Shown here: piece after piece, positions 1,170 to 22,514 of the stretch
Numbering within the stretch: the first letter of the stretch is position 1
Layout: each line of letters begins with the position of its first letter
Source: Ostrea edulis
Taxonomy: Eukaryota
Length of the DNA: 64,000 nt
Reading direction: 5' to 3'
Assembly: GCF_947568905.1 (NCBI RefSeq)
Contig: NC_079171.1
Location: 51,026,001 to 51,090,000 of the forward strand
Notes under the pieces: model-generated
Databases searched by the model: none
The model's input: only the letters and a program-made list of their open reading frames with translations
What the model was told of the DNA's origin: nothing
Program-made: the position numbers and the translations under genes

Positions 1170-1679
1170 ACATTGACTGTTTCTCTTCATCATACACAGC
1201 TTACATCAACTGGTGCCACGTCTCATCCAGTCATGTCAGATTCCATGACCGCAGCACTCGAGCCCGTACCGAATCACGGAACCTCATCAACAAACACACA
1301 CCCTGGTTCACTCAGTCCTGTAGTGACGGGACGACAGAACACGGAGCTAGCAACACCGGACACTAACATGGATTCTACAGTAACTCTGGCGACTGTCGCA
1401 GACACGTTACCACCACCACGTGTATTAAATATAGTTACCCGCATTCCAGCATCGACGGTAACATGCAGTTCTCATTCGATGGGTTCTACTTGCCTGTCTA
1501 TTTCCAAGTCAACCCCCAACATGGTAGCAGACATGACACCAAACGTCAACCAGACTCCCATGGTGGTGGTGAAGCCGATGTTGGTCTCGCCGGCCCAGAG
1601 AGTTCGTTTACAGTCAGGCGGGCAGCAGTATTTGATTACGAAAATTTCTCGCACGGGAGCAGGTGTGGAAGCGTGTATG
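1170..1679 (+). CDS. Putative upstream coding exon A (170 aa, Ser/Thr/Pro-rich low complexity) of the transposase-derived gene; the gene continues 5' of the window
   Basis: Acceptor ccctgatag|ACA at 1170 and donor ATG|gtaagt at 1680. Open frame between them (ORF 1173..1733). Phase 0-0, compatible with exon B at 5130. Confidence 0.55.
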
Positions 1680-2787
1680 GTAAGTTTTATATTTCTGTAT
1701 GGTTGCCATGGTTACACGTACACTCTTACATGACAGCTTGAATAAGTGATATGAAAGGTCACTCATATCAGCCATTATCAAATCTCCCAGAAGGTTGCTA
1801 TATTTAAAGAGGTTCGCACCTGAGATCTGGAGTAATGTCAATTTTTTTGGGAAGTGTATATTTGATTTCTACATTGAAGGAGAATTAGGAAATTAAAAAG
1901 AAAAACTGGGATCGCAACACTTATTATTGAGCTACATTGCTTCAATCATGACCTTTTTGCACTTAAAATTTTTTCAATTAAACTTGATTTGTCTGTTGGT
2001 GTCAACACAACATAATCAACACAAATCAATTATTACATAAAATAGACACATAATAATGTCTTCTAACACTACAGGTAAAAAAAATTAATACTAGTAATGG
2101 AAATAAATAATGATTTTTTTGCACTTGATATACAAAAAACTTCATGATATCAAAATTGAGAGTTTAAAAGGACATATTGGGAGTAATGTCAATTTCTAAA
2201 ATTTTACACAATATTCAAGGTCTGGTCTTACAATTTAGAATGGAACTAAAAAAGGTTTGGATTGGAGATAAGATTTTTGAATTATTGGCGAAAATACTGA
2301 TTTTTTATACAAATTTTCGAGTAAATTTTAAGAATCGGTGTTCTGTGTGGAAAATTAGATCAACCACGTTAATAAATTACATTTGAACTAGTTCCAAGTC
2401 TCATCTACCTGTATCATGAATCATAAAACTGAAATACATGAATAGGAGTATAAAAATAGGCAATACATTGGATGAAACAGAAACTGTAATATCATGCAGA
2501 TTTAGAACTTTCTGATTAATGAATCCTTCTGACTCAAAATATAATCCCTGCCCAACCCTTTCCAAATTTGAATTGACTCAGATTTTTTTTTCCAACTGGA
2601 TAGAGTTCAGTAATAGATGTGTAATATGTTTGCACCAATGGCATCAGTATTAAATCAGTAAATACTTAGTTGTAACTTTTGGGGGGGTGGGGTGGGGTGG
2701 GGGGGTTGGTTGGTTGGTTGATATATGCAACCTGCTTTAATTGCTTTACATGGAATGATTGAGACTTATCAGTGGACCAGGCAAAAT

Positions 2788-2818
<31 letters not shown>

Positions 2819-3549
2819 CTCTCTCTCTCTTTCAAATTATTTTTGAAATTCGCAGTTAATAGATTTTTTGCATTCCAAAGAGGGTCATGAGCTCTCTTTA
2901 CATGTTGGGGGTTGGCAACTACCGTATATCAGGTTTTTCCCGCGTCATGTTTTTTCCGCGAATCAGAACCTAAAACATTATATTAAATTTATGCGAATCA
3001 AATTTTCAGTATTTCAAAGTCATAGCGAAAATATAATTCACGATTATCTAAACTTATGAATGAATTGGGGGTAAACGTCGGTATTTGTACGTATATCTCT
3101 TAATTTTTCATGCAAAAATTCAGCCAATGAATCTATTTACAGGATTTCTGAGTTACTGTCGCAATTATAATCAAATCTCAATAAGGATGATATTCCTGCT
3201 TCTCTGAATCAGTCTCCGACGATTTCGGGTTTTGTTTGCATGTAATCATAGAGCTTTGTCAGCCATTTTGCTCCAAGTGCCTTCATCCAGATTGGAGATC
3301 AATTGAACTCCACCTCGTCAATTTCGGAAGACACGCTCAGCTGATCACACACCTGTGCTGCTTACCAGTGTTCATTTTTGTTTACACTCAAGTATATTGT
3401 AAATATGTACAATTTGGAGGTATAGTAACGTAAATCACTGTTCGTTAGCTATAATGGTACTAGTACAAAATCATTTTCAGTTTAAAACGGCCATCAATCA
3501 TGTACGGTTATATGTACATGTATGAGTAGCTCAGGTATAATTATACATT

Positions 3550-4685
3550 CAGTCTTCACGAAAACTCAGTGGTCCGAAGACCGAGGCCAGTGAATTTTAC
3601 GGTCGGGTCAGTGAAAATTAAAAATCAGGAAGTCCGATGGGCTTGTAGACTTTTTGTAAGTCACGTTAAATATAATGTTGGATTTAGATATTCTAAACGT
3701 CAAGAAAACTTGTACGTTAATCGCGTGAATATTAAACGAACAACTTTTTGAAACAACAACAAATGGCCGCGTTCTGTATTGCACCGCACACCGGTAATTG
3801 CTGCTTTATTGCATTGTCCAATATGGAAGTTCCGAGTTCCCCAAGAGTTATTTCCCTTTGTCGAACTCTTCCGTAAAGTATGACATAAAATATGATGACA
3901 GTGGGTACATTTGCTAATTACTATCGTTGTATTATTTCTTAAAAGATGATATCCAGAGTTTCTAAGACCATCCTATCTCAGGGGAAAGGCAACTTTAGTG
4001 AGTTTATGAGTATTGGATAACAAAATGGCTCAAACAAATACTGTTAATTGCCATCTTTCTTTGATAAAAGCGTCACTCATGTAGAAGAGGAAACGAATAA
4101 TGATTTAATAACCAATTTGATGATCTTATTCAAACAGATTATGCTTAATATGGCCAGAATATACATACCAGTGATTGATATAAACAAAAGTTACGCTTTT
4201 ATTACATTAATCGTACGTAATCGTTATGTACAATGCCAGTCTACGATATAATGTATACATTGTGTACCCACCATACGTCATAAAATGCGAAAGAGTTCAA
4301 CAAAGGGAAATAATTTTTTTGTAACTCGGAACTTGCGTATTAAATGAACTTCGTCAATTGCAGTTATCTCTGATTTTTTGCAATTTCTATAGTTTATAGA
4401 ATTAATAAATCGTTTACATTTGATGTTGGTAGAGAAGACTAGTCTGATTACTTCCTAAGGTGCACTCGGGCTGTTTTCATGTTTGTGAAAAATACTTTTG
4501 TTGTTTGTGGGCAAAGAGAAAATAGTTCCAGTAAATTAATTGTACAATTTTACAATGCATTCCATAATGTATGTGATAAACATATTAAAATTTAGGGTCC
4601 AGTAAATTTAACTGTGGGCCAGTAAATTCAGACAGTTCACTGGTTCCGACTGGCTTGCAAGTTTTAAATGTTTTCGTGAAGACTG
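3550..4685. mobile_element. Nested TIR element flanked by the 6-bp direct repeat tacatt
   Basis: TIR cagtcttcacgaaaac / gttttcgtgaagactg, with subterminal ccagtgaa/ccagtaaa repeats. Confidence 0.75.
3827..4334. mobile_element. Innermost nested TIR element (TIR about 45 bp)
   Basis: aagttccgagtt..ttatttccctttgtcgaactctt, inverted at 4290-4334. Confidence 0.7.
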
Positions 4686-5129
4686 TACATTGATTGAAGC
4701 ACAGACCGTGACCCATTTAATTAGCTTGTCCTGTATTAAATAAACACCGAGGCTCCCATAACTGTTACCCGGCGCTTGTCAGATATAGGGGGAAACAAAG
4801 CTGAACACAGAACTTTCACTGCACCATTATCTGTATGCTATATAACTCTATTACAAACACAAAACTTTGTATGAAATTTACGCGGATTTATTTTCCGCGA
4901 TTCAGAAATCGTTGCGAACAAAGCGGAAATTAGATACACGCGGAGAAAACCTGATATACGGTATGAGTAAGAGGTGCATTAAATAAAAACCATATTCTGC
5001 GATGCTGCATATAATCATGTCACTCTAGCTCAAGTCTGACTCTGAGTATTTACCTGTCAGTAAATGTATGGTGACAAAGAACTTGGATTGCGTAATTTTT
5101 ACTAATTCTTGAAGTACGAATGATTACAG

Positions 5130-5325
5130 GGTAAAAAGAGAGTTGCAGAAGACTCATTGTACACAAAACCTGTGAAAAGGAGACTGACACGGAAGAAGCA
5201 AGGGCCCAGTACCAGCAAAAAATCTGCAAACATATCGGAAACAGAGACCCAAAGTTCGGAAGAGGACCAGTCAAATCAAAAAGAGGACCAGTCAATTGAG
5301 AAAGAGGACCAGTCAAATAACCCAA
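5130..5325 (+). CDS. Putative coding exon B (basic NLS-like stretch, then acidic EDQS repeats)
   Basis: Acceptor gattacag|GGT at 5130 and donor CCA A|gtaagt at 5326. Reads GKKRVAEDSLYTKPVKRRLTRKK...EDQSNNP. Phase 0-1, which matches the phase-1 acceptor at 6912. Confidence 0.6.
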
Positions 5326-5645
5326 GTAAGTGCATTAGATAATCAGCACGGACGACAGACCCTAAATTTTAAAATTCATTGCCCCAGGGTCAGTTCTGAT
5401 GCTTTCCAGACTGGGTACCCTACCTGATATATTGAGAGGACATTATTCTTTGAAGTACAAAGGTACGTTTTGACTCATGGGAATCAAATTTTCAAACTTT
5501 ACTCTGGAACATCTAGCACATAAACTATTTTAAACATGATGGCATCTAGATTTTGGAACCTGGGGTTCGGGGTCCATCAGGTGCTCAATAAAAGCTAAAA
5601 TCTAGCAATTTGAGATATTTACAGGTGAAACACGGACCAGTCACA

Positions 5646-6728: not shown

Positions 6729-6911
6729 GGACTACGTGACCATGTGGGATAAAAACTGGTCAGTAGAGTTAGCTGGGCTTTGTCTTTTTGGGTATGAAAG
6801 CTAGATATTATTCTGTATTGGTTCGTAGTTGTAGTTTGTGTGTAAGTAACTCCACATCTTCAAGTCTGTGGTGATTGTATGTTTGTCACTCAACATCTTT
6901 GTTAAAATTAG

Positions 6912-9900
6912 CAGATGCCCAGTGGAATGGTGAACAAAAAGAGACAGGGAGTAAAAAACGTGGTAGACCTTCAGTGTTGTCAGAATCGGAACGTAAAAGG
7001 AGGCGCTCGGTGCTAAACAAGAGGCTGTCGAAACAGAGAATTTACCTGGGAGCAGTCAAGGAAGAATGGAATCAGCTCCGTGAGGCTCTAAATCTCGAGT
7101 CCAACCCTGATCTTGCCGAATTTCTTATTAATCATCAGTAAGTTTAGGTATTTCTGATCAATCATCAGTAAGTTTAGGTATTTCTGATCAATCATCAGTA
7201 AGTTTAGGTATTTGTCATCAATCATCAGTAAGTTTAGGTATTTGTCATCAATCATCAGTAAGTTTAGGTATTTCTCATCAATCATCAGTAAGTTTAGGTA
7301 TTCTGATACACTCGTCACATGTATGGAAGAAAAAAAGTCTGAAACATTTCATTGCAATTATTTCATTATGAATGTAATAATCAATTATAGATGTTCAGCA
7401 TTAGGACATGTTAAAAATGAGAAAAAATTCAATGAATATTATATATATTGATACATATAGGTATAGATAGGTATTATGTAACTGGAAAAATCTTAATCTA
7501 ATTTGCTACTTTTAGGGTTTGGATTGCAAAAATTTCCACCCACAGAAAAACCTGTAATGCAGTATGAGAAGAAATGACCTTTTATTAGAGAGAGACCCTC
7601 TAAGGGCTGTTCCAGAAATGATCAAATGGGGGGGTCGGGTGGCAAATGATATTTTTTTGTGTGGGTGGTCGTATTTTTTCATATTTTAATTGGTCCGTGG
7701 TGGGGTTGTTAATAAAATATTTATTATGGGTAGTGGGTAGTTTTTATTGTTTTATTTTGTGCTACGTGGGTGTTGAGTTTTCAGAATATTTTTATTGTCG
7801 CTCTTGTCGTGTTGGTTACAAAACGTCGGAGGGAAAATTGAAAACGTGCTTTCGAAATGCTGCTTTCGAAATCGAAAGTAACATAGAACTATTCGAGTTG
7901 TCGCTCTTTGCAGCGCATAACTTTCCATTACGACACTCTTCAAATTAGAGGCGCGTTTAATAGGGTCCCTTTGGACGTGATGGCGGCGAACTCTGTTCTG
8001 TAGATTATTACAGTTTACAGTGCATCGATTTTGGGAATATTTTGAAACCAATAGGTATTCCGTTTTCTAATAAAAATAGGCAAACCTTAGTTGATTTATA
8101 CGAGGGTACCGATGCGTTATATTTATCAGTCGGTGTGATGGTGATATAGAGGCCTCCTCCGGGCGCGGGCTCCATTAGAAGACGAACGATTCGTGGAAAA
8201 ACATATCCATACCCATTTCATGATAATAGCATCGTTTGGACTCCCAATCTTTCCAACATTCCCGCCATAGATGCCTTTGATTGTTGATGTGACATCGTTT
8301 CTTCAGAACTACTGTGATACAATGTTGCACAGGCATTACCGCGTCATTGACTAGAATGTTTGTCCCGAAAACCTCGTGAGATTTGTACCGTTTTCATTTT
8401 TAAAAATATTTTTGTGGTGGGTCTGGTTAGTTTTTTTTTTTTTATTAGATGGGTCATTGTAAAATGAGTTTATTAATTTGATGGGTCATGGGGTAATTTT
8501 TTATTTTTTTTTATGGGTGCTTGGTATATACAAAAGGTGCCTCCCGACCCCCCCATGTATTTATTTCTGGAATAGCCCTAAGCAATATATAGTGACATAC
8601 ACTACTTCTCTTGACAATGCACTGCTCTCGTAAAATTCAATATATACTGTATTATTCAATAACTTACAAATTAATTTCTTGAAATTCTTATGCATTATGT
8701 TGATCAGATGCTACAATAGGTCTATTGACCATTTCCCTTTAGGTTATTTAGAAATCATGTGTTTGCTTCGCACGTATAATAAAAGTGTTGAATTTAGTGA
8801 TTCAGAACATCAGACAATATTTATCAATACATGTATTTCTTGTTTTATTTGAAATAGCCAACAATGCCAGAATGTTTTTGCCAGTACTTCACCTCCAGAG
8901 AAGCCTCAACCACATGCAAAGTTGGAAATGTCTTCAACAGACGAAAAAGAAAATGGCAGGCAAGTTTTAGTTCATTTGAGCTGGAAATTCAAGTGAGCAA
9001 TTCTAATCAAGGTTTGCCTATCTGCCTGGTGGGGGCTTTCCACATTTTCAACACCTTCCCAAAATTGCAGGTCCAATTTCAACTAAGTGTGCCACAAAGT
9101 ATCCATAGTTTAATGGGGTTCAATTTTGAACAAAGGAAAGGTATTCTTCCTTGGAAGTTCTCCCCATAGTAACTGAGTGTTAATAGTACACAACTAAAAG
9201 CCTCGTATTTACACACACCAAACACAGCTAAAAGTCTCGTATTTACACACATCAAACACAACTAAAAGCCTCGTATTTACACACACCAAACACAGCTTAA
9301 ATTCTCGTATTTACACACACCAAGCACAGCTTAAAGTCTGAGACTCGTATTTACACACATCAAACACAGCTAAATGTCTTGTATATACACACAAAAAACA
9401 CAACTAAAAGCCTTGTATTTGCACACATCAAACACAGCTAAAGGCCTCATATTTACACACATCAAACACAGCTAAAGTCTTGTATTTACACACCTCAAAC
9501 ACAGCTAAAAGTCTTGTATTTATATACACACATCAAACACAGCTAAAAGTCTTGTATTTACACACCTCAAACACAGCTAAAAGTCTCATATTTACACACA
9601 TCAAACACAGCTAAAAGTCTCATATTTACACACATCAAACACAGCTAAAAGCCTCATATTTACACACATCATTCACAGCTAAAGGCCTTGTATTTACACA
9701 CATCAAAGACTGCTAAAAGTCTCGTATTTACACATATCAAACACAGCTAAGTCTTGTATTTACACACCTCAAACACAGCTAAAAGTCTCGTATTTACACA
9801 CATCAAACACAGCTAAAAGTCTCGTATTTACACATATCAAACACAGCTAAAAGCCTTACATATATATACACACATCGACTAAAGCTAGAAACCTCATACT

Positions 9901-11033
9901 TATGAGTTTAAAACAACAGGTTATAAACGAGATCTTCGGGTTCCTTATGGGTGGTTGGAAGCAGCCTAGGTGTTGACTAGCTGTTGATAATCATTCTAAG
10001 AGTAGATAAGAAAACCATGGATCATATAATAAACTTTGTTTAAATGTCAAATTTCAGTTGCAGTATAAAGCAAGAAGTTTGTAAAATTACATATAAATCT
10101 GTTTTGTTTTGAAGATCCATTGTGAGAATCAGTGAGGATTTTGAGGAGGAGGAGGAGGAGGAGGAGGACTCAACACCAGACCTCAGTTTGATTTTAGGGT
10201 ACCTTATTTTGTTCTGTTTACATGTATACCGTATGTCACACTGTGCACAAGGTTATGTCTGTTAGAAATCTGTCCCATATATCATGTTAATTAAAATATA
10301 GGTAAACATCTACATATAATTAATGACTTTTATTTACTATCCCTTCACATCATAGTGGGGGACACTGTATTAATGTTGTGTATGGTGTACATCTCATGCT
10401 GTGGATGTATGTGTGTTTATCTTTGTAAATGTTTTATATGAAGCAAACATCTGTGTAGTGTACTGAAATTGTAGTGAAAAGGACCACACAGACATTGAGG
10501 ATGTAGCAGGAGGGAACCTGGTGTTTGGAGTGGGGGAAATGTCACTTCCTGAGGACAAAGTGGGGGAAATGTCACTTCCAGAGGACAGAGTGGGGGAAAT
10601 GTCACATACAGAGGACAGAGTGGGGGAAATGTCACTTCCAGAGAAAGAAGCAGCAGAAAACGTCAAAGTTCCAGGTATCATGCAGATTCTGACAATGGAG
10701 GAGTCAGAACTGGTACTGAGATCAGAGAAAGTGATAGTGTTTGAGGAGCAGCTGCTGATGTTGGCTAAATCCAAGATTGATGATCAATGTTTAGTGAAAG
10801 GGTGTCCAGAAGCTGTGAAAATTTCAACAAGATATGTAGCATCTGCATTGTATCTGGTTTGGGTGAGTGTCTTTTACAAACACTTACAACTGGCCTCCAT
10901 AGCTGTAAAGTAGAGTAGTAAGTTTAAACTTGGAGGATGTGAATGAACCGTAATGTAAGAAGGAGGCAGAGGGGCGAGATCCAAAGTTCTATGTCTAATA
11001 GGAAATTTAATTCACATAGTTGTCATCAAAGAC

Positions 11034-11071
<38 letters not shown>

Positions 11072-14000
11072 ATCTCAAAACTTTCTATGATGAAGGTTGA
11101 TCCAAATTGATTATCTTGTAATAACACAACAGTACTAAATAACACTGATTACAGGTACAGGTAAACTTTGGTATCTCAAATACTGATATGTCGAATACCA
11201 TGGATGTCTCGAAGTGAGTCGACAGTCACGGCCAGTTTTACTATATTAATGATTTTAAAAAACCCCGGTATCTCGAACACGAAAATCTCGAATACCTGGC
11301 TTATCTCGAAGTAGATTTACGGTCCCAAGTGCTAAAAACACATGTGGTATCTGAAGTCCAAGAATTTTCTCGCTTCATTGACCTCACACATGAAGTCCAA
11401 AATCATCCCTTTATGCTAATTTTACGGTCTGTTGGACGTTTCTGATAAGTCTAGAATGGGCTTCATGGCACCATTGCCGATAATCACTTCTTATTAGCCC
11501 CTGTTTATATGGGAGCTTTATCTAATTATGCAGATTAGGTGTTTGGAGGTGATCATGAAATACACATTTATATGTAAGATGACATGATAATTCAACAAGC
11601 AGTGTGGGGGCGAGTACTGAAATAGGAGTTTAATTTTGTCGCAGTACACATTTACACATGCTATTACAAGTCAAAGTAAACACTAAACACATCAAAGGGA
11701 TATAGAAATCAAGAATTAAACAATAAAAGTCCTGTTTTTTTAAGTATAAGTATCAGCACCAAAATTCAAAATCTTCAGTATCTGATAAGCAATATACATG
11801 TAACGAACGACCCGGTATCCGACCCGGTATCCAACCCAGGGGATAGTGGGATTATCTGGCAGTGGTGTAAAAAGGAATCTTAAAGTTCATAAAATTGAAA
11901 TAAAGTTCCAGGCTATAACAGAAGTAGAAAAAGACACAGGATCCAAGGCAGCGATACTTCCTGTTTCCGTCTTCGTCATTATTACTGTGATCGGTTTATC
12001 ATTTACAGAGCGTAACACAAATCCGGGTATCAGAAATACTGAACCGAACATGATAGCTGATTATGATAAACGACTGAAATTCGTAAAATGTAAGTGTTGC
12101 AGTGTCAAATAAAGTAAAAATAATATACAATATGCATGCAAATGCAAACATATTAGAAAGAATCCTTAACTTCAAACTAAAACTTTTACCGATTTTAAAA
12201 GGTGTGTTTATTTACCTGTAATATAAAACAATATGCAACGTCAATCCATGAACTTTGATTTCTCGAACCCTCGGATATCTCAAAGTTTTTCTTCGGTCCT
12301 AACAAGTTCGAGATATTGAAGTTTACCTGTATATGTTTTCTAGTGTTTATCAACAAATCAAAGATGGGATGTATTATGGTATGGTGTCTTCCATCTGTCT
12401 GTCTGTCGTAACCTTGTAGACAAAATGCAGTGAACTGTAAGCACCAGGAACTTGCAACTTGTTATATTTGATAACCCTGATGAAAGGAAGATGCTTTATG
12501 TTTTTTAAGGTCCAGGGTTAAAGGTCAAGGTCGTAGTATCAATTACAAGGAAAACCTTTTAGGCAGAATACAGACTGAACTATTGGAGCTAGGATCTTAC
12601 AACTTGGTACATTTAATCACTATGATGAAAGGAAGATGTATATCATTTTACAACGTCAAAGGTCAAGGTCATAGTATCAGTTGATAGGAAAACCTTGTAG
12701 ACAGAATTCAGACCAAAGTATTGAGGTTGGGACTGTCAAACTTGATTCACATACTCCTCATGCCAAGTAGAAGACACCTTTTGTTCTCAAAGTTCAAGGT
12801 TGTTGTATATCCCTTAGTAGGAAAACCTTGTAGGCAGGATACAGACCGAATCATTTGGGCTAGGACCGTCAAACTTGGTACACATACACCTTATGCCATG
12901 CAGAGGATGTCTAATGTTTTTCAAGGTCACAGCATCATTTAGTTGATAAACCTAGTTTTTGTTACAAATACAGATAATGTCCTGAAATTTAGTCACAAGC
13001 TTCCTCACAGAGGAATATAAGTTTAGTTTGCGTTTCAGTTGCCAGTGGTTTGGTGCACCATGACCTATTTTAGGGGTAAAAGAAGGTCAAACAATTTCCC
13101 AGATTTTTTTTCTTACGAATACAGGTATTTCCCTGAAATTTTGTCACAACCTCCTTTTCAGAGAAATACATAATCAGTTCACACTTCAACTTGATTGTTG
13201 CCCCATGACCTATTTTAGAGCTAAAAGTAGGTCAAATAATTTTCTTGACTTTTTCTCATCATGGATAGATATTGCATTGAAGGTGTTGCAGTTGTATGTT
13301 TTACTGTTGAATGTTCATTAAAATGTTTTAGATGTAGTTTTATTTCTAAACATTCAATGAGTCCTGTTCACTGTCTTCCCGCTGAAGCGCTGCAGCATCT
13401 GCTTGTGTTTTAAGAGTTGGTATATAAACCAACGTGATAGCTGTGTACCGCAACAAAAAAAGGTTTACTGACAAAGAATAGTAGTGTTTAAAAAGTTTAA
13501 CTCGAAAATTATTTGTGTATTATAATAAAATTTATGTTGGATGCAGGAGATTTTACCCCCACCCCAAAACTAATTGAATTGAAAATTTTACTGGAAAACC
13601 ATTTGATCTCGCCCCTTTCTGCTGCCTAATCAGTTTATGTTTCACAAAATGAAATATTGTTTGGATAAGCGTAATGCTCTGGTAGTATGAGTGGATAGTG
13701 ATGGTTATTGATTTTCTGTGTATGCTTACAGTCTTGCTCAAACAAACACATAAAACATCGGTGGTGCTCCCAGCCACTGCTCAGTGGAGGCTCTCAGAGT
13801 GGGGACTTGATGATAACCGCTGCAATTCTTTGCTCTGGGAATGATTTCTGCAAGGTGAAGAGGATGGCAGATTTATTGCATCTTCATTTTCCAAGTCAGT
13901 CGTCATTTACACAGCTTCAGCAGAAGTGTCTTGTTCCAGCCATTGAGGAGACGTGGTTCGAACATCAACGAAGTGAGAGGACGAAACTTAACGATAAAGA

Positions 14001-17000
14001 CGTCGTCCTGCTGGGTATGTGACAGTGAATAATAGTGTTAAAATAGATGTACAATTTATTTGTTGACCGGTTGATTTTTACATGTTGACTGGTTGATATT
14101 TTCTTGTTGACTGGTTAATATTTACATGTTGACGGGTTGATATTTACTTGTTCACGGGTTGATATTTACATGTTGACTGCTTAATATTTAATTGTTGACT
14201 GGCTGATATTCCTCCGAACAGTAACTATTCTCTAAGGCGTAATTGAAGAACTTATGTAGATGAATAGAATAAATTTGCTATTTTCCAAATCTCTAGTCAT
14301 AAGAGTACAAGAGGGAGATATGTTGACTTTCTTTATTAGGGAAGCCCTATAGTAATCACATTGTCCATCCATCCGTCCATCTGTCTGTCAACACTTTCTT
14401 TGTGACACGATAACTCAAAAACAGTTTTCATCGTACAGTTTTCAAATTTTGTAAAGAAATACTTTACAATAAGAGGAAGACACCTATAGACTTATGTCCT
14501 GTGTCACAGTAGGTGTTGCATGCTAAAGAACCCTCACTGCTCAATGGCCTAAATTTGAAGCTCTTCACTGGTCTTGGTGACATCTCCATATGAGTGAAAA
14601 ATTCTCTCGAGAGACGTTAAGCAAGATACAATCAATCAATCAATCTTATTATGACTGTATCTATTTACCACTGTCTAAGGGAGATAATTCAATTTGAATT
14701 GTGATATGAATTATATTGATAATAGAAAATTTGCAAAAAATAACTCTTCAACATTGTGTATGTGTATATTTTGTTTTTGTTTTTTTAATGTGATGCTTGA
14801 TGTTACATGTATATTGAATTAAAACGTCATTGCCAGTCAGCAACTCTCGACCGGGATCAGAATGCAAAATAAAATTTCTTGTAGCTGGTTGCAAAGTGAA
14901 ACTGCTTCATTGAACTATGCACGTTACACATTAGAGAACTATTCCTTTTAATAAAGAAAGTCACAAAATAGATACAAAATGAATGTACCTTATTCATTAT
15001 TGTTGCCGAGCTTTCATCGATGAAAATCTCGAAATGGCGTGTTTCACTGCGCTTGTTGACGGTAAGGTTCACATTTTCAGCTCGAGTATTTTGATATTTG
15101 CTTATGAATTTTTTTAGCACATACATGGTATGTCTCTGCTAGGAATAATGGAATCTGTCTCACCTATATATGTAAAGACATATTCTATAGATTTCTATTT
15201 CTAAAAATGTATAACATGTCTATCAAATGTGTATGAAAATGTTAAGACCCCCAATGTCAGAATTTCCTTTTCCGAGACATCAATATGTCAAATTCATAAT
15301 TCTTTTCAAATAGAATGTACCACATTTTTTACCAGTTATCCATTTCGAATCCCCTATTTCAATAGGATTTAGTTGCACTCTGTTGTGTTTGAGTGGATGA
15401 GTGTGTCAAACAGAAGGAATTTAAATTTTCACAAATTTGCATTCCAATATATCATTGAATATTTATACCCCCCGAACGAAGTTCTGGGGAGTATATAGGA
15501 ATAGAGTCAGAGTGAGTCTGTCTGTCCGTCCGTCTGTCTGTGCAGATTCGTGTCCGGGCCATAACTTCTTTCTTCTTTGACTTAGGCATACCATATCTGG
15601 CACACGGGTAGATCACCATGAGACGATGTGTCGAATACCTTCATGATCTCTATATGACCTTGACCTCAAGGTCAAAATTAAAGGTTTTTTACAGTGGATT
15701 TGTGTCCGGGGCTTAACTTCTTTGTTCTTTGACATAGGCATACCATATTTGACACATGAGTGTATCACCATGAGACGATGTGTCAGGTACCTTCATGACC
15801 TCTATTTGACCTTGAACTTTGACCTCAAGGTCAAAATTGATTATAGAGTTTTGACATAATCATACCATAAGACATGGGTGTATCACCATGAGACTATGTG
15901 TCATGTACATTCATGACCTCTTTATGACCTTGACCTTTGATCTCAAGGTCAAAATTGTAGGTTTATGCCATGGATTTGTGTTCAGACTATATCTCTCATT
16001 TTCTTCCACAAAGGCATACCATATTTTGACACTCAGGAAAGAGGTAATTTATACCTATTAACAACACCCTTTGGGAGATTGGGGTAAGCGGGGGGTATTC
16101 TTAGTGAGCATTGCTCACAGTACATCTTGTATTAGTTCTAACATATATATACCAGCCCCAAACATTGCTATATCAAATACAGATGTCACTTTCCTCTAAT
16201 AACCCTCAGCGGGGCCTTTGCTGACTGTGTCACTTTCCTCTAATAACCCTCAGTGGGTCCCTTGCTGACCGTGTCAGTTTTCTAGTTTGGATTTATACTG
16301 GAGGTGATGTTAATATTGATATAAATTGAAGTCTTCTGATTAATAGTATGTATTTCCATTGAAACTAGTTTTCTAAAATTTGAAATAAGATTTTATTTGG
16401 GGGTGAAAATCTGTACAGTGTAAATACTTAGAGGCATTTTTGATATTTGATGCGTACCTTGATTAAGGTTCTTGATTTTATTTTACAGAGGGTATCTCTG
16501 AGATATTTTGTATTGGTTCATCTTGTTTTAGTATTTTCAGTACTTTGATTTTACAGGGGGCGGATGTCTGTGCAGCCCTGGGAATGGTGATCAATATTGT
16601 ACATATGCAATGATGGAAAATTACAGTAAAAAAATAATTGCTATGGAAACACTTGACAAGAGAGACACTCGTAAAGTTGATCTGGAAAAAGTGTGTTTTC
16701 AGAGAGCTCTGGAAGACATTAGAAATAGTTTTTATGTAACAGAAGTGGTTACTGATGTACATCCGCAGGTTGATGAGTTGATGAGTGAGTATTTGACGCG
16801 GCTGAAACGATACGCCCCCTTCACGATACGTCCCCTTCATGATACGCCCCGTTCACGATATTCCCCCTTCATGATACACCCCCTTCATGATAACGCCCCC
16901 TTCACGATACGCCCCCTTCACGATACACCCCCTTCATGATACGCCTCCTTCACAATACAATACATATTGCAATACTTATGCCATGATTCGATATTTTCAA

Positions 17001-20000
17001 TAAGGTAAATTTTACAGAAGAAAGCAATAATGACTCCAGAGAAAAACTCATCAGATTCGTGGTGAATGACAGTTTGACTGTTATTGGATGCCATTTTGTC
17101 CTTTGTGCATGTAGAAAGATTAAGTATAGGTCAAGCCTGATGTACTTTACCAAACCTGATTTTAAAAATCAACATTTATATTGAACAGTATCAATATTTC
17201 AGTGAATCGTTTCAGCCCTAAATTATATGTACATTTATCACTAATTTTGTGCAATGACTGCTTTAAGTACTATTTGTAATTTTCTGAAATGTTTGTTATG
17301 AATTTAAAGCAAAGGGTTTTTTAAGAGACATATTTCCTTTGTATGCAGAAAAGCAGTATTCTCGCATTAGACATTCACATGATGTATGGCAAGCAGCAAA
17401 GGAGTTGAGGGAAAAAATTATTGCGGTAAATATCTAACATCATTTTGCAAATGGGAATAAAGTGTGGCTTTAGTCTTGAGCTAAAGTTTCCGCTTTAACA
17501 AGAATTCACTATAAAATATAAAGTTCATCATTTTAAAGTCTGGAATCAAAGTGCTCAGATTAACAACCAAAGTGTCTGGATTAACAAATATTTATAAACT
17601 AGATATTTTGGATTAGGAAGCATTTGATATTTCATTATCTATATGAATTTAACACATTTTATACATCTGGGAATGTTTCACTGTGAAATGAACTGATCAT
17701 TAATTTAAGTACTGATCTATTTGCACCATTCACAATTTTGCAGGCTGGTCAAGATAAACGCTGCAAAGACCTTTTAAACTGGTGCAAGGATATAGTCGAA
17801 CATTTTTGGTACAGCTGTGAAGTTGCGAGTTCACATGAAGAATTTCTAGTAAGTGTTTTTTATACATAAAAGGAAAGAGGGCTGTCTCTCAGCTAGAGTT
17901 AGAACCTTTCCCCATAAAGATATGATTTAGTAGTCAGGGGAAAAGAACTCGCCATCACCCATTTAATGTCCCCCATTGTAACGCAGAAAGGAACACAGAG
18001 ATACCGGTACCTGTGCATCCGTCCGTCCCACTTGACTTTGTGGACACAACTCCTCTAAATCCGCTCAACGGATTTTGTTCAAATTTTGTAGGATTGTTAG
18101 TCATTATGTAGTTTATCATATTGTGCCGGCATATTGATTTGACGAATTTTACAGGAATTATGGGACTTTGTTGAATTTGTACATTCTTTACTATAGGAAC
18201 ACTTTGTGGCCGCAACTCCTCAGAAACCGCTCAACAGATTTTGTTCAAATTTTGTAGAATTTTTAGTCACCATATGATCACTGCAATTTTGATTTCACAA
18301 ACGTTACAAGAGTTATAGAGCATTTATACTGGGACTTTTTTTTTGCGGCAGTGGGGGACATATGTCTACACGCAGCAATCTTACAATGCTTTCTGTGTCA
18401 TATTATATCAATATATTCTTATTATTTCAACTTTGTTTTACTCCGTTTACCTGATCAAAATACAGAACTTGCATGATAGGTCGACAGGGGATGCTTACTC
18501 CTCCTAGGCACATGATCCCACCTCTGGTGTTTCAAAGGGGTTTGTGTTTGCCCTGTTATAGATTCTGTATTCATTATAGGAGTCACCGTAAATATGTTTA
18601 TATTTGCTGTCGATTAATTTTTAGTGTTTTTGCGAGTCAGTTAAATTCGCAAAAATATTTTTCTCAAAAATAATGTTTCACATGTTTTTTAATATGTTTT
18701 TACATAAATTTGCAAAATTAAGAAACACAAAAATGAATATATAGACTATTTACTCCAATTCACAAAAAATAAATCGCCGCAAAAATATCCAGATTTACGG
18801 TATGAGATTTGATCACTGTTTGTTATCTTGACCTTTTTCATTTTTACATATATATTTTTTTACATTTTATGAGTGCATTATACAATAGAGGTAGTTATAT
18901 TTTCATTTCTGATGATGGTCACCAATTTACAGGACATCTGGGTAGGAATGACCCACCACGTACTAAACAAACATAAGTGGGTGTCGTCGTATGCTAGTTT
19001 AGAACCAGGATATTGTTCCCATGGTGAACTGGATGAGGACAGAGACAAAAAATGGCTGAAAAAGAGGACTTCTGCCTACACCGCCCTGATTAAAATTGTG
19101 ATGGACAAGCAGTTCTTAAAAAATGTACACTACCTCCTTAATTTTAGGTAAATATTAAAATCTTCATTTTGTGTCTGTTAAAGTCCATTTCCATGCCTTG
19201 TTTATAAACTTTAGATAGTTTATCATTTCTCTGAAGCTCCTTCATTGAATTTTATCGGTTTTGGAGTGTAATGCATGCGGGACTAAATGAACAATGGCTA
19301 AGGTCCCATCTGACTTTAGCTGGTTGGTTGGTTGTATACTTGTGGAAAAAAGAAACTGTATACTTAAAAGTTTAACACAAACGTAAAAGGTATCCTTTGA
19401 TTGTTCTTTATTGAAGGCATATGTATGCAATGTATTGAAACAGATAAACAGTGTGTTTTTTTAGCTCACCTGAACCGAAGGTTCAAGTGAGGTTTTCTGA
19501 TCACATTTTGTCCGTCGTCCGTCTGTAAACTTTTCACATTTTCGACTTCTTCTCCAGAACCACTGTGCCAATTTCAACCAAACTTGGCCAAAAGCATCCT
19601 TGGATAAAGGGCTTTCAAGTTTGCTCAAATGAAGGGCCATGTCCAAAGGGGAGATAATCACAAAAATGCAAAAATAGGGTGGGTTTATTTAAAAATCTTC
19701 TTCTCAAGAACCACTGGGCCAGAAAAGCTGAAATTTACCTGAAAGCTTCCTGACATATTGCAGATTCAAGTTTGTTCAAATCATGCCCCCCTCCCCTCCC
19801 CCCAGGGCCACAATAGGGGATCAAAGTTTTACATACAAATATATAGGAAAAATCTTTAAAAATCTTCTCAAGAACCACTGAGCCAGAAAAGCGGATTTTT
19901 ACATGAAAACTTTCTGACATAGTGCAGATTCAAGTTTGTTCAAATCATGGCCCCCGGGAGTAGGATGGGGCCACAAGGGGGGATCAAAGTTTTACATACA

Positions 20001-22514
20001 AATATATAGGGAAAAATCTTTAGAAATCTTCTTCTCAAGAACCACTAAGTCAGAAAAGCGGATTTTTACATGAAAACTTTCTGACATAGTGCAGATTCAA
20101 GTTTGTTCAAATCATGGCACCTGGGAGTAGGATGGGGCCACAATGGGAATCAAAGTTTTACATACAAATTTATAGTTAAAATTTTCTTCTCAATAACCAC
20201 TGAGTCAGAAAAGCTGATATTTACAAAAAACTTTCTGACATAGTGCAGATTCAAGTTTGTTCAAATGTGTGTGTGTGGGGGGGGGGGGGGGGGGGAGGGT
20301 AGGATGGGGCCACAAGTAAGTGGGTGGGTCAAAATTTTACATACAAATATAGGGAAAATGATTGTTTGCGTGCTGTAACTGCTCTTGGGATGCTGTAAGC
20401 TGGGTTGTCTCAAGATAGTTTGGAATTCATATTAACACTGGAAATGCTTTGTGGAGATGATATCAGCAAACTGGCATTGTTCAGGACTGCCCATGATCAG
20501 GACACCTATGTTTATACGTACATCACCTTTGCGTATTTGATTCCAAAAGCCAAGGCCCTGTTTCACAGCAGGTGTGGCATGATAAAGATCCCTCCCTGCT
20601 CAAAGGCTATGAGCATAAGCCTAAATTTTGCAGCCCTTCACCGGCAATGGTGACGCCTTCGTATATGTGAAAAATTCTGAAGAGGGACGTTACAATTTAC
20701 AATCAATCAATCTCTTCATATGGGAATAAATATAACTTTGTTATGAGTACATGTATGTTTGAATAAGCATGTTTATATGTATATGTGGCTATAGTTTTAT
20801 AAGTCTTCTTCTCTATGCAACAGACATGGAGGACTCAATCAAAACCATTATATTCATGCAAGAACATGTATTCAGTTAGACTAAATAAAATCTCAGTAAT
20901 GTTTTGGAACATTATCCCATAACATGATTGTAAAGATATTGAAGAGCAGAATTTGGTTTTGGTTATGGTAATTAGTATTAATTATCTTAGAGATGTAGTG
21001 ATCACCAAACTTGGCTGATTGAGAAAGAAGAAAAAAATCTGTTACAATAATGAAAGCTAGCAATTGTCACTTCAGATAAAAAAGAAAAAATCTGTTAAAA
21101 TAAGGAAAGTTTGCAATTGTCACTTCTAATAAGAAAGAAAAGATGGACTTAGATGTCAGATAAATCATCATGTAAACATACCAGGAACACAACTAGTAGG
21201 TTTTGTTACTTGTAGTATTTGGGTCACCATCGAAATCCTTGGCACCTTGTTTGAATTTATCTTCTATTAAGCATGGAACCCGTGACACCTTGTTTGAATT
21301 TATCATGTATTAAGCACGCTAGAAATAATCTTCCAAGTGCATCATTATTTTCTTATTAGGAGTACAGCAAACCTTGAAATCTTCAACAACCATGTTTGGA
21401 TGCATGCATCAGAAAGGCTGACATATACTCCTGATGTGTACAGAGCAAGAAACATCTTAGCTGCACTAGATTACAACAGCAGTGTAGATCTGCCCTCAGT
21501 AACAAATGAAGACGACAGTTCTAGGTATGTTACAACAGCAGTGTAGATCTGCCCTCAACAACAAATGAAGACGGCAGTTCTAGGTATGTTACAACAGCAG
21601 TGTAGATCTGCCCTCAGCAACAAATGAAGATGGCAGTACTAGTTATGTTACTAGTGAAAGTCGACTACATCCTATAGGGTTTTCTATATACACTAGTCTG
21701 TATTTGTGAGAGTTAATAAGGAGGTATACCACATTGTGATCATGGCAGACTTTCTTTTAAAGCATGAATGGAAACATAACTATCAACAATATTTGTATAT
21801 TCTGTTGAGATTTAATTGCCTCGCGGAGTATCTCAGTCGGTGAAAATGCTGATTTGAGTCCAGCAGGGGTTTTAAATATTTTCAGATTACTTTCTATTAC
21901 AATTGCATTTTTTACTAAATTAAGTAAATTTGAAAGTTTTCCATTTCATAATATTATAAATATCCTCTACCTTTCATCTCAGGTGTAGAATTCCTACTTA
22001 AGGTAAACTTGACCTTTTAACTTCGGATTTTGACCTACATTAAGACTGCAATACTTATGTTTTCTCATTCTGAGCTTAGTGATAAAAAATTAGTACTGAA
22101 TTTTTAATTCTCATAATCTGAAAACGCTATTCAATGAATTCTACCCATTATTTCATTATGACCTTGACTTTTGATCTAAGTACACTACAGAATATGGTAA
22201 AGTTAAAACTGATGACGGTAAAGCATAAACAAATGACACCTGAGCCAACAGATTAGGTGTGCTTAAGATTAACAGACTTCTGTGCACTGATTACTATAGG
22301 GCTCCAAAGTCTGCTTTCTCCTTTTCCTTTTAACGGCTGTTAAATTTGGACTGATTATTAGAAATGAACTTATTTACATTGTCAATTCAGATATCAAAGA
22401 ACATTTTCGAAGAAGTCCGGGAGATGGATTATTGCTGAAAGAAAAGAGAAGAAGACATACCATCATATCGAAGACATTTTTGAGAAAAGTTTAAGGATTC
22501 AATTTGAAGTGTGA
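6912..22514 (+). CDS. Multi-exon gene encoding a Kolobok/Mutator-class DDE transposase-derived protein, with catalytic motifs altered
   Basis: Exons 6912-7137, 8858-8959 (GC donor), 10115-10198, 10475-10862, 13732-14014, 16557-16784, 17349-17425, 17744-17848, 18933-19147, 21360-21524, 22391-22514(TGA). All phases chain in frame with no stop. Motifs: LLG-GGCLCSPG..QYCTY (family form GDGRxDSPG), VVTDVH, HSHDVWQAAK (DxWH), DIVEHFWYSC, HHVLNKHKW, CSHGEL, STANLEIFNN, YRARNILAALDYN, FSKKSGRW. Confidence 0.88.
7128..7305 (+). repeat. 30-bp tandem repeat x6 containing the exon C splice donor
   Basis: aatcatca|gtaagtttaggtatt.. with donors at 7138, 7168, 7198, 7228, 7258 and 7288. Confidence 0.95.
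7604..8578. mobile_element. PIF/Harbinger-type MITE, TAA TSD
   Basis: taa|gggctgttccagaaat ... atttctggaatagccc|taa. Confidence 0.8.
9205..9862. repeat. Intronic ~34-bp minisatellite, about 19 units
   Basis: cacacatcaaacacagctaaaagtctcgtattta. Confidence 0.95.
11158..12329. mobile_element. Tc1/mariner(pogo)-like MITE, TA TSD
   Basis: TA|caggtaaact..tatctc ... gagata.tgaagtttacctg|TA, with internal atctcgaa subterminal motifs. Confidence 0.75.
14060..14210. repeat. 22-bp minisatellite just downstream of the exon G donor
   Basis: gttgactggttgatatttacat x ~7. Confidence 0.9.
15462..16130 (+). mobile_element. HINE/Helentron-type non-autonomous element with internal tandem repeats
   Basis: tttatacccccc start, (gtct/gtcc)n microsatellite, repeated tgaccttgacct..caaggtcaaa units, terminal hairpin tgagcattgctca. 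Confidence 0.7.
16808..16955. repeat. 16-bp minisatellite just downstream of the exon H donor
   Basis: gatacgcccccttcac x ~9. Confidence 0.9.
18586..18800. mobile_element. Small CCGTA-terminal MITE inserted into a Penelope-tail repeat
   Basis: ccgtaaat...atttacgg|TA interrupts the conserved ggagt|tatgagatt string of the repeat at 18441-18840. Confidence 0.7.
19458..20400 (+). mobile_element. HINE-type element with about 5 copies of a ~165-bp satellite-like unit
   Basis: ttttagctcacctgaaccgaaggttcaagtgag start, gtccgtcgtccgtc, repeated gcagattcaagtttgttcaaatcatgg. A related copy lies at 25150-25600. Confidence 0.75.
21472..21651 (+). repeat. 59-bp tandem triplication of the exon L 3' end, including its donor
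   Basis: AG|gtatgt at 21525 and 21584; third copy mutated to ag-ttatgt at 21643. Confidence 0.95.

What the first reader, a model, noticed from the sequence alone, without database searches (positions are those of the whole stretch)
1170..22514. A >=13-exon, ~900-codon gene built on a disarmed Kolobok/Mutator-class transposase
Seen in sequence: 13 exons whose phases chain without a stop over 21 kb, with introns full of nested MITEs, SINEs and HINEs (long residence). The transposase signatures are recognisable but altered. The GDGRxDSPG motif reads GGGCLCSPG, so both Asp are lost, including the first catalytic one. DxWH reads DVWQ. The second D (VTDVH) and the E (LEIF) are retained, as are Cys/His residues of probable zinc sites. 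Established: the D..D..(C/D)xxH..E layout is shared by Kolobok, MULE, hAT and P transposases. Inference: a domesticated transposase that kept DNA/metal binding, lost cutting, and was captured by host exons adding an S/T/P-rich region and a basic NLS-like stretch.
Basis: partly seen in the sequence, partly recalled or inferred. Interest (0 to 1): 0.8.

Follow-up and report, generated by a model that had tools for sequence, protein, structure and literature searches.

The report
Disarmed Kolobok transposase gene in oyster
This is the larger part of an annotated but unstudied flat-oyster gene whose back half is a jumping-gene enzyme (Kolobok transposase) that has lost its cutting residue. The gene is still spliced and kept in frame, and it has a mirror-image twin next door, so it is a fresh example of a host taming a transposon.

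Summary
Window 1200-22514 (+) holds exons 6-18 of Ostrea edulis LOC125661394 (XP_056002385.1, 18 exons, 1445 aa). Five more exons lie 8.3 kb upstream of the window.

Exons 8-18 (665 aa) are a whole Kolobok-superfamily transposase ORF from an oyster-specific subfamily that already carried these introns.
- The first catalytic Asp is Gly: GDGRMDSPG reads GGGCLCSPG.
- DxxH reads DVWQ, and Tyr/Lys after the catalytic Glu are changed.
- The conserved C-terminal tail is lost.
- D2, E, the CCCH and H2CH zinc ligands and the AT-hook N-module are kept.

A head-to-head paralog, LOC125661398, 8.7 kb upstream, shares the same lesions. The two loci are colinear through their introns, so this is a segmental inverted duplication. 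In the transposase part dN/dS is 0.40 (Fisher p=1.7e-5). Spliced contigs of both genes occur in one public run.

A third copy on another chromosome keeps D1 but has stops and deletions.

Best reading: a lineage-restricted, catalytically dead, domesticated Kolobok transposase pair. It is probably a non-cutting DNA-binding protein. This is a new member of a known kind, since Kolobok domestication is described in Xenopus. Orthologs outside O. edulis and any function remain untested.

The parts
1200..1679 (+). Exon 6 of LOC125661394 (aa 556-715): S/T/P-rich, low complexity; no counterpart in the related TE copies
   Evidence: Exact CDS reconstruction; no match in L001
5130..5325 (+). Exon 7 (aa 716-780): basic NLS-like stretch KPVKRRLTRKKQ followed by an acidic/Ser-rich stretch
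   Evidence: no match in L001
6912..7137 (+). Exon 8 (aa 781-855): start of the TE-derived part. It holds the AT-hook-like KKRGRPS and the family's three-helix N-terminal module.
   Evidence: An HMM built from 8 other family members scores 69.7 bits, E=4e-20; alignment A2; AF2 model of three helices, pLDDT 80.8; homologous exon in L001 and L004
8858..8959 (+). Exon 9 (aa 856-889): linker; GC donor
   Evidence: weak match in L004
10115..10198 (+). Exon 10 (aa 890-917): acidic stretch (E-run)
10475..10862 (+). Exon 11 (aa 918-1047): in-frame 30-bp x3.9 repeat (GEMSLPEDRV), then the first half of the CCCH zinc module (C..C)
13732..14014 (+). Exon 12 (aa 1048-1141): C..H of the zinc module, the WCSQP block and helices leading to strand beta1; ends ...VVLLG
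16014..16087 (+). Alternative terminal exon of RefSeq isoform X2 (XP_056002386.1, 1165 aa). It lies inside a high-copy repeat and would cut the protein off before the catalytic core.
   Evidence: depth 1e4-1e5 there, so the reads cannot test it
16557..16784 (+). Exon 13 (aa 1142-1217): beta1-beta4 of the RNase H fold. It reads GGCLCSPG (D1->G, next conserved D->C), and VTDVH (D2) is kept.
   Evidence: An X26 contig ends exactly at 16784 and continues for 37 letters elsewhere. The paralog is only 80% identical here, so this contig is the window gene's own transcript.
17349..17425 (+). Exon 14 (aa 1218-1243): HDVWQ, the C/DxxH motif with its His lost
   Evidence: spliced joint 17425>17744 in X26
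17744..17848 (+). Exon 15 (aa 1244-1278): helical insertion domain
   Evidence: joints 17425>17744 and 17848>18933, GT..AG
18933..19147 (+). Exon 16 (aa 1279-1349): H2CH zinc finger (HH..C.H), intact
   Evidence: An X26 contig with 0 differences and another carrying the paralog's differences are both present.
21360..21524 (+). Exon 17 (aa 1350-1404): catalytic Glu (LEIF) kept. The Y and K that are invariant in the family 9 and 12 residues later are changed to H and E.
22391..22514 (+). Exon 18 (aa 1405-1445 plus stop): ends ...SLRIQFEV*, before the family's conserved C-terminal tail
22523..23030 (+). 44-bp x11.5 tandem array in the 3' region. It derives from the TE segment that encodes GMHHPAELxxRDPRR, a relic of the lost C-terminal tail, and the paralog has the same array.

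Best explanation
Window 1200-22514 (+) is the 3' two thirds of Ostrea edulis LOC125661394, an 18-exon, 1445-aa gene.

Origin (shown). Exons 8-18 are a complete transposase ORF of an oyster-specific Kolobok subfamily, which already had introns at these positions. Its parts, in order, are an AT-hook with a three-helix N-module, an acidic linker, a CCCH zinc module, and an RNase H-like DDE core with an H2CH finger.

Lesions (shown). The copy lost its first catalytic Asp (D->G), the neighbouring invariant Asp (->C) and the His of DxxH. It also lost the Tyr and Lys that follow the catalytic Glu, and the conserved C-terminal tail.

Later history (shown). The copy gained seven 5' exons. The whole unit, introns included, was then duplicated in inverted orientation, which gave the head-to-head paralog LOC125661398 with the same lesions. 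Both genes keep full-length frames, both are spliced as modelled, and nonsynonymous change has been held to about 0.4 of the synonymous rate.

Function (inferred). The protein can no longer cut DNA. It keeps the transposase's DNA- and zinc-binding architecture, so it most likely acts in the nucleus as a non-catalytic DNA-binding protein. Plausible targets are Kolobok-type ends or MITEs, or AT-rich DNA through the AT-hook.
For: Identity of the gene: exon E matches XP_056002386.1 at 100%, and isoform X1 XP_056002385.1 is in the same cluster. The CDS was rebuilt from the genome and translates exactly.

Kolobok descent:
- In the 34-member alignment the D1 block, D2, DxxH, H2CH and E are in register.
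- Curated Kolobok-1_BF and Kolobok-1_AP transposases in the supplement of PMC9587614 read LLGDGRCDSPG..HCAKYCSYT / VTD / DVFH / LENFH.
- That paper and PMC6004289 give C/DxxH plus a zinc finger before E as Kolobok signatures.
- Distant relatives carry THAP domains.

Fold: the AF2 model has pLDDT 88.9, with G1143 on beta1, D1208 after beta4 and E1356 on a helix. The nearest solved structures are ISCth4/IS256 transposase (Foldseek E=3.5e-6; VIA Z 14.5), P element and Hermes.

Source subfamily: intact relatives are P0171 (63% identical), Saccostrea P0172 and C. virginica P0194. The genomic copy L004 has the same intron positions and short introns. The tree gives an ostreid clade with support 99, and the stem to the gene pair is long, at 0.37.

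Selective loss: 76 of 98 family-conserved columns are kept. The shared losses include the active-site positions D144G, D148C and H233Q and, close after the catalytic Glu, Y366H and K369E.

Pair and constraint:
- The paralog lies head to head 8.7 kb upstream.
- The two loci are colinear through introns at 78-95% identity.
- For the transposase part dN=0.078 and dS=0.195, a ratio of 0.40 with Fisher p=1.7e-5.
- Random substitution at the observed density leaves the frame open in only 0.6% of trials.

Transcription: run X26 has GT..AG joints 17425>17744 and 17848>18933. It also has contigs that break exactly at exon edges, for the window gene and for the paralog.
Against: - dN/dS of 0.4-0.5 is relaxed for a host gene.
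- Identity between the paralogs is mosaic (exon 12 is 99% identical at the protein level, exon 13 63%), which points to gene conversion.
- No long ortholog was found among annotated proteins of Crassostrea, Saccostrea or Pinctada. The gene may therefore be young and restricted to Ostrea.
- Run X26 is of unrecorded type. I take it as RNA only because its contigs are spliced.
- The joins of exons 1-7 to exons 8-18, and of exon 12 to exon 13, rest on the RefSeq model and on the conserved phases in both paralogs. No junction contig that I saw shows them.
- Isoform X2 would drop the whole core.
- DNA binding and nuclear location are inferred from motifs only.
Confidence: 0.72

Rival explanations
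1. A young TE-host chimeric transcript without a host function. On this reading an immobilised Kolobok copy is read through from an upstream promoter and is drifting towards pseudogenisation. The open frames and dN/dS<1 would be leftovers of recent origin and gene conversion.
For: - dN/dS is 0.40-0.50, and some exons are near or above 1 (exons 6, 14, 16).
- No orthologs turned up in other oyster proteomes.
- Isoform X2 truncates before the core.
- Tandem arrays duplicate the donors of exons 8 and 17.
- A sister copy in the same genome, L001, has decayed.
Against: - Nonsynonymous change is significantly depleted (p=1.7e-5 for the core, 1e-13 for the whole CDS).
- Intron divergence of about 17% equals dS, so the duplication is not very recent.
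- With about 110 substitutions in the core, a neutral frame stays open only 0.6% of the time, yet both copies are open over 17 and 18 exons with every splice site intact.
- Structural and zinc-ligand columns are kept while active-site columns are lost.
Confidence: 0.17
2. Two separate genes wrongly merged by the gene model: a mucin-like S/T/P-rich gene (exons 1-7) and a separate transposase-derived gene (exons 8-18).
For: - RefSeq names isoform X2 'mucin-17-like'.
- I saw no junction contig for exon 7>8, because only 13600-19200 could be laid.
- TE relatives begin their ORF at the exon-8 homolog.
Against: - The same 5' exons, splice phases and order are kept in the inverted paralog.
- Exon 7 ends and exon 8 starts in phase 1 in both genes.
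- No stop or start signal separates the two parts in either gene.
Confidence: 0.08
3. The transposase gene of a still-mobile, very large intron-rich Kolobok element.
For: - The source subfamily does have intron-bearing transposase genes.
- Earlier notes of this scan mention intron-rich Kolobok-like elements elsewhere in this genome.
Against: - The first catalytic Asp, invariant in all intact relatives, is Gly.
- The second copy arose by inverted segmental duplication that took along the non-TE exons and the introns, not by transposition.
- The word search of the core found no other protein above 63% identity.
Confidence: 0.02

Closest known systems
Kolobok superfamily DDE transposases (Repbase Kolobok-1_BF, Kolobok-1_AP; Kojima & Bao 2022, PMC9587614)
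   Same: It shares the first-Asp block GDGRxDSPG..AKYCxY, the VTD second Asp, the C/DxxH motif, the H2CH zinc finger before the catalytic Glu and the LExF Glu block. It also has an RNase H fold with a helical insertion.
   Different: Here D1 is Gly, the next Asp is Cys, and the His of DxxH is Gln. The C-terminal tail is missing, and no TIRs or TTAA duplication are evident. This subfamily has no THAP domain; an AT-hook plus three-helix module takes its place.
Domesticated XKol transposase genes of Xenopus (Hikosaka & Konishi 2018, PMC6004289)
   Same: These are also Kolobok-derived single-locus genes with conserved H2CH and DNA-binding motifs but broken DDE triads, several of them reading GDE as here. 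Some also lie in adjacent duplicates.
   Different: The Xenopus genes are single long ORFs with THAP domains and have orthologs in two species. The oyster gene has 18 exons, a 780-aa non-transposase N-terminal extension and no THAP domain. So far it is seen in one species only.
Host-transposase fusion genes formed by transposase capture (Cosby et al., bioRxiv 10.1101/2020.05.07.082677)
   Same: A transposase ORF is spliced to upstream exons to give a chimeric protein with a dead catalytic core.
   Different: In vertebrates it is usually only the DNA-binding domain that is captured by a host regulatory domain such as KRAB or SCAN. Here the whole transposase is kept, and the 5' part is low-complexity with no recognised domain.
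ISCth4 (IS256 family) transposase, PDB 6XGX/6XG8
   Same: It is the best structural match to the modelled core and its upstream domain: VIA Z 14.5 over 264 residues and Foldseek E=3.5e-6.
   Different: It is a bacterial, active enzyme with about 10% sequence identity and no H2CH finger.

Membership tests
Kolobok superfamily (descent of the protein) | First-Asp block GDGRxDSPG followed by xxAKYCxY | tested here: met
   The block aligns in register with 32 relatives and with curated Kolobok-1_BF and Kolobok-1_AP. In the window it reads GGGCLCSPGNGDQYCTY: recognisable, but both Asp are replaced.
Kolobok superfamily (descent of the protein) | C/DxxH motif between the second Asp and the Glu | tested here: met
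   The family has HDIWH; the window has HDVWQ in the same column, with Asp kept and His lost. The motif's role as a signature is taken from PMC9587614.
Kolobok superfamily (descent of the protein) | H2CH-type zinc finger between C/DxxH and the catalytic Glu | tested here: met
   THHVLNKHKW...CSHG is in register with the family's HH..C.H. The feature is described in PMC9587614 and PMC6004289.
Kolobok superfamily (descent of the protein) | RNase H-like DDE fold | tested here: met
   AF2 model with pLDDT 88.9 and order beta1-beta2-beta3-alpha-beta4-alpha-beta5. Matches: ISCth4 Z 14.5, integrase cores Z about 11, Hermes Z 11.
Kolobok superfamily (descent of the protein) | THAP DNA-binding domain (present in many Kolobok lineages, not all) | tested here: not met
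   No Pfam THAP in the window exons or in P0002, which covers aa 1-1141, i.e. everything N-terminal of the core. THAP is present only in distant relatives P0025 and P0073. This subfamily has an AT-hook plus three-helix module instead.
Kolobok superfamily (as a mobile element) | TTAA target-site duplication and TIRs with 5'-RR...YY-3' ends | tested here: inconclusive
   No convincing TIR pair flanks the decayed copy L001. No intact element of this subfamily with its ends was available. The gene itself is not expected to keep TIRs.
Catalytically active DDE transposase | Intact D-D-E triad | tested here: not met
   The triad reads G-D-E in the window gene and G-E-E in the paralog. D1 is Asp in 30 of the 31 other aligned members that have this block. 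This is shown by sequence only; no assay was done.
Domesticated (host) transposase gene | Immobile single locus with an intact frame and purifying selection | tested here: met
   Exact 18- and 17-exon frames. Inverted segmental duplicate that is colinear through introns. dN/dS 0.40, p=1.7e-5, and 0.6% frame survival under neutrality.
Domesticated (host) transposase gene | Transcribed and correctly spliced | tested here: met
   Spliced contigs in run X26, both for the window gene (contig edge at 16784) and for the paralog. Caveat: the run type is not on record, and the 12>13 and 7>8 junctions were not seen.
Domesticated (host) transposase gene | Syntenic orthologs with the same lesions in other species | not testable with these tools
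   The protein searches found only O. edulis proteins with this architecture. No eukaryote genome search was available. A 93%-identical spliced contig from 'organism B' (X20) cannot be assigned to a species.

The most novel reading that the evidence does not exclude
The two head-to-head, catalytically dead Kolobok-derived genes may form a working pair, for instance a heterodimer. Such a pair would still recognise the ends of Kolobok elements and their MITEs, which are abundant in oyster genomes, and would act as a sequence-specific repressor or chromatin organiser at those thousands of sites. That would make it a transposon-derived regulator of a transposon-derived cistrome in a mollusc.
Probability: 0.15. 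Interest if true: 0.65.

Novelty: new member of a known kind. Interest (0 to 1): 0.45.

Why it matters
Domesticated transposases are well documented in vertebrates, flies and plants. In the paper library searched here, Kolobok domestication has been described only in Xenopus, and no report concerns a bivalve.

This locus is a clean, dated case in a mollusc:
- the intact source subfamily, a decayed sister copy and two constrained derivatives can all be compared;
- the lesions fall on the active site while the zinc and DNA-binding parts are spared;
- the inverted pair gives an internal measure of selection.

It offers a tractable entry point for asking what hosts do with dead Kolobok transposases in TE-rich bivalve genomes.

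It also corrects an annotation. 'Mucin-17-like' and 'uncharacterized' hide a transposase-derived gene.

Tried and rejected
- Pfam on single exons found nothing. The family has no Pfam model of its own; relatives give only sub-threshold Mutator/MULE hits, and a few carry PF20700 in precomputed annotation.
- The word search with the exon-13 ORF found only the 208-aa model of the decayed copy, because of the length window of that tool.
- The TIR search around L001 gave no convincing pair.
- ARAGORN found no tRNA-like SINE heads in 1-24000, so I did not classify the intronic repeats.
- The N-terminal module folds into three helices (pLDDT 80.8), but Foldseek against the PDB gave nothing significant; the best hit was a homeodomain at E=2.9. 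An HTH assignment is therefore not supported.
- Exon 1 compared with the N-module gave only weak similarity: BLASTP E=0.007, HMM 10.8 bits, with 2 of 5000 shuffles scoring higher. I treat this as a lead only.
- Runs X19 and X20, guessed to be RNA from 'organism B', gave mostly repeat hits. One exon-16 contig is closer to the paralog. It cannot serve as ortholog evidence.
- Earlier scan notes near this place: none.
- The supplements of PMC6004289 do not contain the motif strings. No member of this exact subfamily is in the PMC9587614 alignments.


Full report
WHERE THE WINDOW IS.
- The best holders of the stretch are oyster DNA runs.
- A search with exon 12 (window 13732-14013) against the representative protein library gave a 100% match to a 1165-aa protein.
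- Cluster look-up names this protein XP_056002386.1, 'mucin-17-like isoform X2', of Ostrea edulis. The same cluster holds XP_056002385.1, 'uncharacterized protein LOC125661394 isoform X1', 1445 aa.
- The locus fetched for isoform X1 (L002, OX387711.1 51007727-51058514) contains the window's first bases at offset 18274 and is identical from there on. The window is therefore OX387711.1 51026001-51090000.

THE OBSERVATION.
- I rebuilt the CDS from genomic DNA under the condition that it translates exactly to the RefSeq protein.
- The gene has 18 exons. Exons 6-18 lie in the window: 1200-1679, 5130-5325, 6912-7137, 8858-8959, 10115-10198, 10475-10862, 13732-14014, 16557-16784, 17349-17425, 17744-17848, 18933-19147, 21360-21524 and 22391-22514. 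That is 13 exons and 890 codons, with consistent phases, AG acceptors and GT donors (one GC).
- The motif readings are right. Exon 12 ends ...VVLLG, and with exon 13 this gives LLGGGCLCSPG. HDVWQ, VTDVH and LEIF are as stated.

WHAT FAMILY IT IS.
- Pfam sees nothing in the exons. The protein searches, however, find hundreds of relatives in bivalves, a gastropod, priapulids, hemichordates, echinoderms and fish.
- In a 34-sequence alignment the family shows GDGRMDSPGHxAQYCxYT, VVTDAH, HDIWH, HH..N.H.W...C.HG and LExF(H/N/Q).
- The supplement of Kojima & Bao 2022 (PMC9587614) aligns Kolobok transposases from the first Asp to the last Glu. It contains Repbase Kolobok-1_BF (LLGDGRCDSPG-HCAKYCSYT...VTDHRH...YDVFH...LENFH) and Kolobok-1_AP with the same blocks.
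- That paper and Hikosaka & Konishi 2018 (PMC6004289) give C/DxxH and a zinc finger before the Glu as Kolobok signatures. Descent from a Kolobok transposase is therefore well supported.
- The AlphaFold model of residues 1000-1445 is confident (pLDDT 88.9, pTM 0.84). It has the RNase H order of strands and helices. Position 1143 (Gly, where the family has Asp) is on beta1, D1208 follows beta4, and E1356 is on a later helix.
- The nearest solved structures are the IS256-family ISCth4 transposase (Foldseek E=3.5e-6; VIA Z 14.5, 264 residues, rmsd 4.3), the P element transposase and Hermes. These are the superfamilies grouped with Kolobok in the literature.

WHICH PART IS TE-DERIVED.
- The closest intact relative is P0171: 575 aa, 63% identical, assembled in 89 near-identical Logan records.
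- A genomic contig of the same subfamily, L004, has homologs of window exons 8, 9, 11, 12 and 13 in the same order. The exon 11/12 and 12/13 boundaries fall at the same residues, the introns are short, and the GDGRMDSPG motif is intact. The introns are thus a feature of the source element, not of long residence.
- The TE-derived part starts at exon 8. This exon encodes KKRGRPS (an AT-hook-like core) and a conserved module RIxIG...W..L+...L...(D/E)(V/L)Ax(F/L)L that is found at the N-terminus of family members from Pinctada, Argopecten, Crassostrea and Mya.
- An HMM built from those members scores exon 8 at 69.7 bits. The module is predicted as three helices, with no significant PDB match.
- Exons 6 and 7 have no counterpart in the related copy L001. 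Exons 1-5 lie outside the window and were not compared, apart from the weak exon-1 resemblance noted below.

WHAT IS BROKEN AND WHAT IS KEPT.
- Of 98 columns conserved in at least 85% of 32 other members, the window protein keeps 76 and the paralog keeps 74.
- Losses shared by both genes include D1143G (first catalytic Asp), D1147C, H1232Q (DxxH), N1236E, and Y1365H and K1368E just after the catalytic Glu.
- The CCCH and H2CH ligands, the WCSQP block and the hydrophobic core are kept.
- LEIFN is also the state of the intact nearest relatives, so it is not a lesion.
- The conserved C-terminal tail (GMH.P.EL...DPRR.S..IAP..PP.T....KSRF) is not translated. A stop follows ...SLRIQFEV, and the tail's first segment has become a 44-bp x11.5 tandem array at 22523-23030. 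The paralog has the same arrangement.

THE PARALOGS.
- A region search with the core found LOC125661398, 84% identical. Its first exon lies 8.7 kb upstream of the start codon of LOC125661394 on the opposite strand, so the genes are head to head.
- It has 17 exons with the same phases. Its counterpart of window exon 6 is fused into exon 5. It has the same 5' extension and the same GGGCLCSPG, HDVWQ and truncated tail, and its D2 has additionally become Glu (VTEAQ).
- The two loci are colinear through intron flanks at 78-95% identity. This is an inverted segmental duplication made after the lesions arose. The identity is mosaic, which suggests gene conversion.
- A third copy on another chromosome (L001; LOC130052702, modelled as 208 aa) keeps D1 (GDGRMHSPG). 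It has stops in the homologs of exons 8 and 12 and lacks exons 14-16. It is an independently decayed element.
- In the tree the gene pair, L001, P0171, Saccostrea P0172 and C. virginica P0194 form an ostreid clade with support 99. The stem leading to the pair is long (0.37) and the two tips are short (0.09 each).

SELECTION.
- Nei-Gojobori counts between the two genes give dN=0.124 and dS=0.263, a ratio of 0.47, over 1210 codons. For the transposase part (398 codons) dN=0.078 and dS=0.195, a ratio of 0.40.
- dS is close to the intron divergence of about 0.17-0.2.
- The depletion of nonsynonymous change is significant: Fisher p=1.7e-5 for the core and 1e-13 overall.
- When the observed number of substitutions is placed at random, the core stays stop-free in 0.6% of trials and the whole alignment in none of 3000.
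- Because the copies arose by segmental duplication, this constraint acted at the locus and not on a mobile lineage.
- The ratio is nevertheless high for a host gene, and some exons are near 1.

EXPRESSION. Only one 5.6-kb stretch (13600-19200) could be laid.
- Run X26, whose type is not on record, has one contig with GT..AG joints 17425>17744 and 17848>18933.
- A second contig ends exactly at 16784 with 37 further letters elsewhere. It differs from the window at 3 of 223 letters, whereas the paralog is 80% identical there. It is therefore the window gene's own transcript.
- A 751-letter contig enters exon 12 exactly at its acceptor and carries the paralog's three diagnostic differences.
- Exon 16 is present both as a 0-difference contig and as a paralog-type contig. 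Both genes therefore appear as spliced molecules.
- Low-depth unspliced contigs are also present.
- I did not see the 12>13 and 7>8 joints.
- The alternative last exon of isoform X2 (16014-16087) lies in a high-copy repeat and cannot be judged from these data.

MECHANISM.
- Shown: descent, fold, loss of D1 and neighbouring active-site residues, retention of zinc and N-terminal modules, duplication, constraint and splicing.
- Inferred: the protein cannot catalyse cleavage or strand transfer, because D1 is essential in DDE enzymes (established knowledge, not tested here).
- Also inferred: it persists as a DNA-binding, probably nuclear, factor. The basic stretches are KPVKRRLTRKKQ and KKRGRP. Possible targets are ends of Kolobok elements or MITEs, or AT-rich DNA.
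- The long S/T/P-rich and acidic regions suggest a disordered regulatory or interaction arm.

COMPARISON AND NOVELTY.
- Kolobok domestication, including G-D-E variants and adjacent duplicates, is described in Xenopus (PMC6004289). Capture of transposases by upstream exons is described in vertebrates (bioRxiv 10.1101/2020.05.07.082677).
- I found no report for bivalves.
- The gene is annotated but uncharacterised, and one isoform is misleadingly named mucin-17-like.
- I rate it a new member of a known kind, of moderate interest.

LIMITS.
- No eukaryote-wide genome search was available, so orthology and copy number outside the annotated proteomes are untested.
- The run names are coded.
- TIR and TSD features of the source element could not be examined.

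Noticed in passing
window 32429-33400 (-), 37712-38707 (-), 59408-60319 (-): Three paralogous ORFs of 300-330 aa. The second has a DUF3504 domain (E=9e-8) with sub-threshold QRICH1 and Phage_integrase hits, and the third matches DUF3504 and QRICH1 below threshold. The first has no Pfam hit and is grouped with them by eye on sequence likeness. These look like Crypton-type tyrosine-recombinase-derived proteins. RefSeq models a 1283-aa product on the minus strand from about 27491.
   Followed up: partly
window 27491-28006 (-) and 53345-53713 (-): Two Cys-rich ORFs (C..C ... C..C). One of them has a Q-rich 14-aa repeat. They lie near two of the DUF3504 ORFs and may be exons of the same genes. Pfam finds nothing.
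   Followed up: no
window 50901-51875 (+): A reverse-transcriptase fragment (RVT_1, E=1e-11) followed by a further ORF; a LINE-type remnant.
   Followed up: no
L002:6599-6751 (outside the window, between the two head-to-head genes): A third copy of the 51-aa first exon, 96% identical to exon 1 of LOC125661394. It may be an alternative or relic first exon in the shared intergenic region.
   Followed up: no
window 7120-7302 and 21471-21651: A 30-bp x6.1 array repeats the donor site of exon 8, and a 59-bp x3.1 array repeats the 3' end and donor of exon 17. Both could offer alternative donors.
   Followed up: no
P0195 (Crassostrea virginica LOC111099125, 643 aa): A member of a different oyster subclade reads GNGDVDSLG / VTNAH / KDVWQ, so it also lacks D1, D2 and the His of DxxH. 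It has a long branch of 0.52. It may be an independent domestication or a decaying copy.
   Followed up: no
P0152 residues 1-50 (exon 1, upstream of the window): The first exon aligns in register with the family's N-terminal three-helix module; G, W, A and L are invariant across all 11 rows. The support is weak (10.8 bits; 2 of 5000 shuffles score higher). The 5' extension may itself stem from a second, truncated Kolobok copy.
   Followed up: partly
window 9188-9853: A 34-bp x19 tandem array in intron 9.
   Followed up: no
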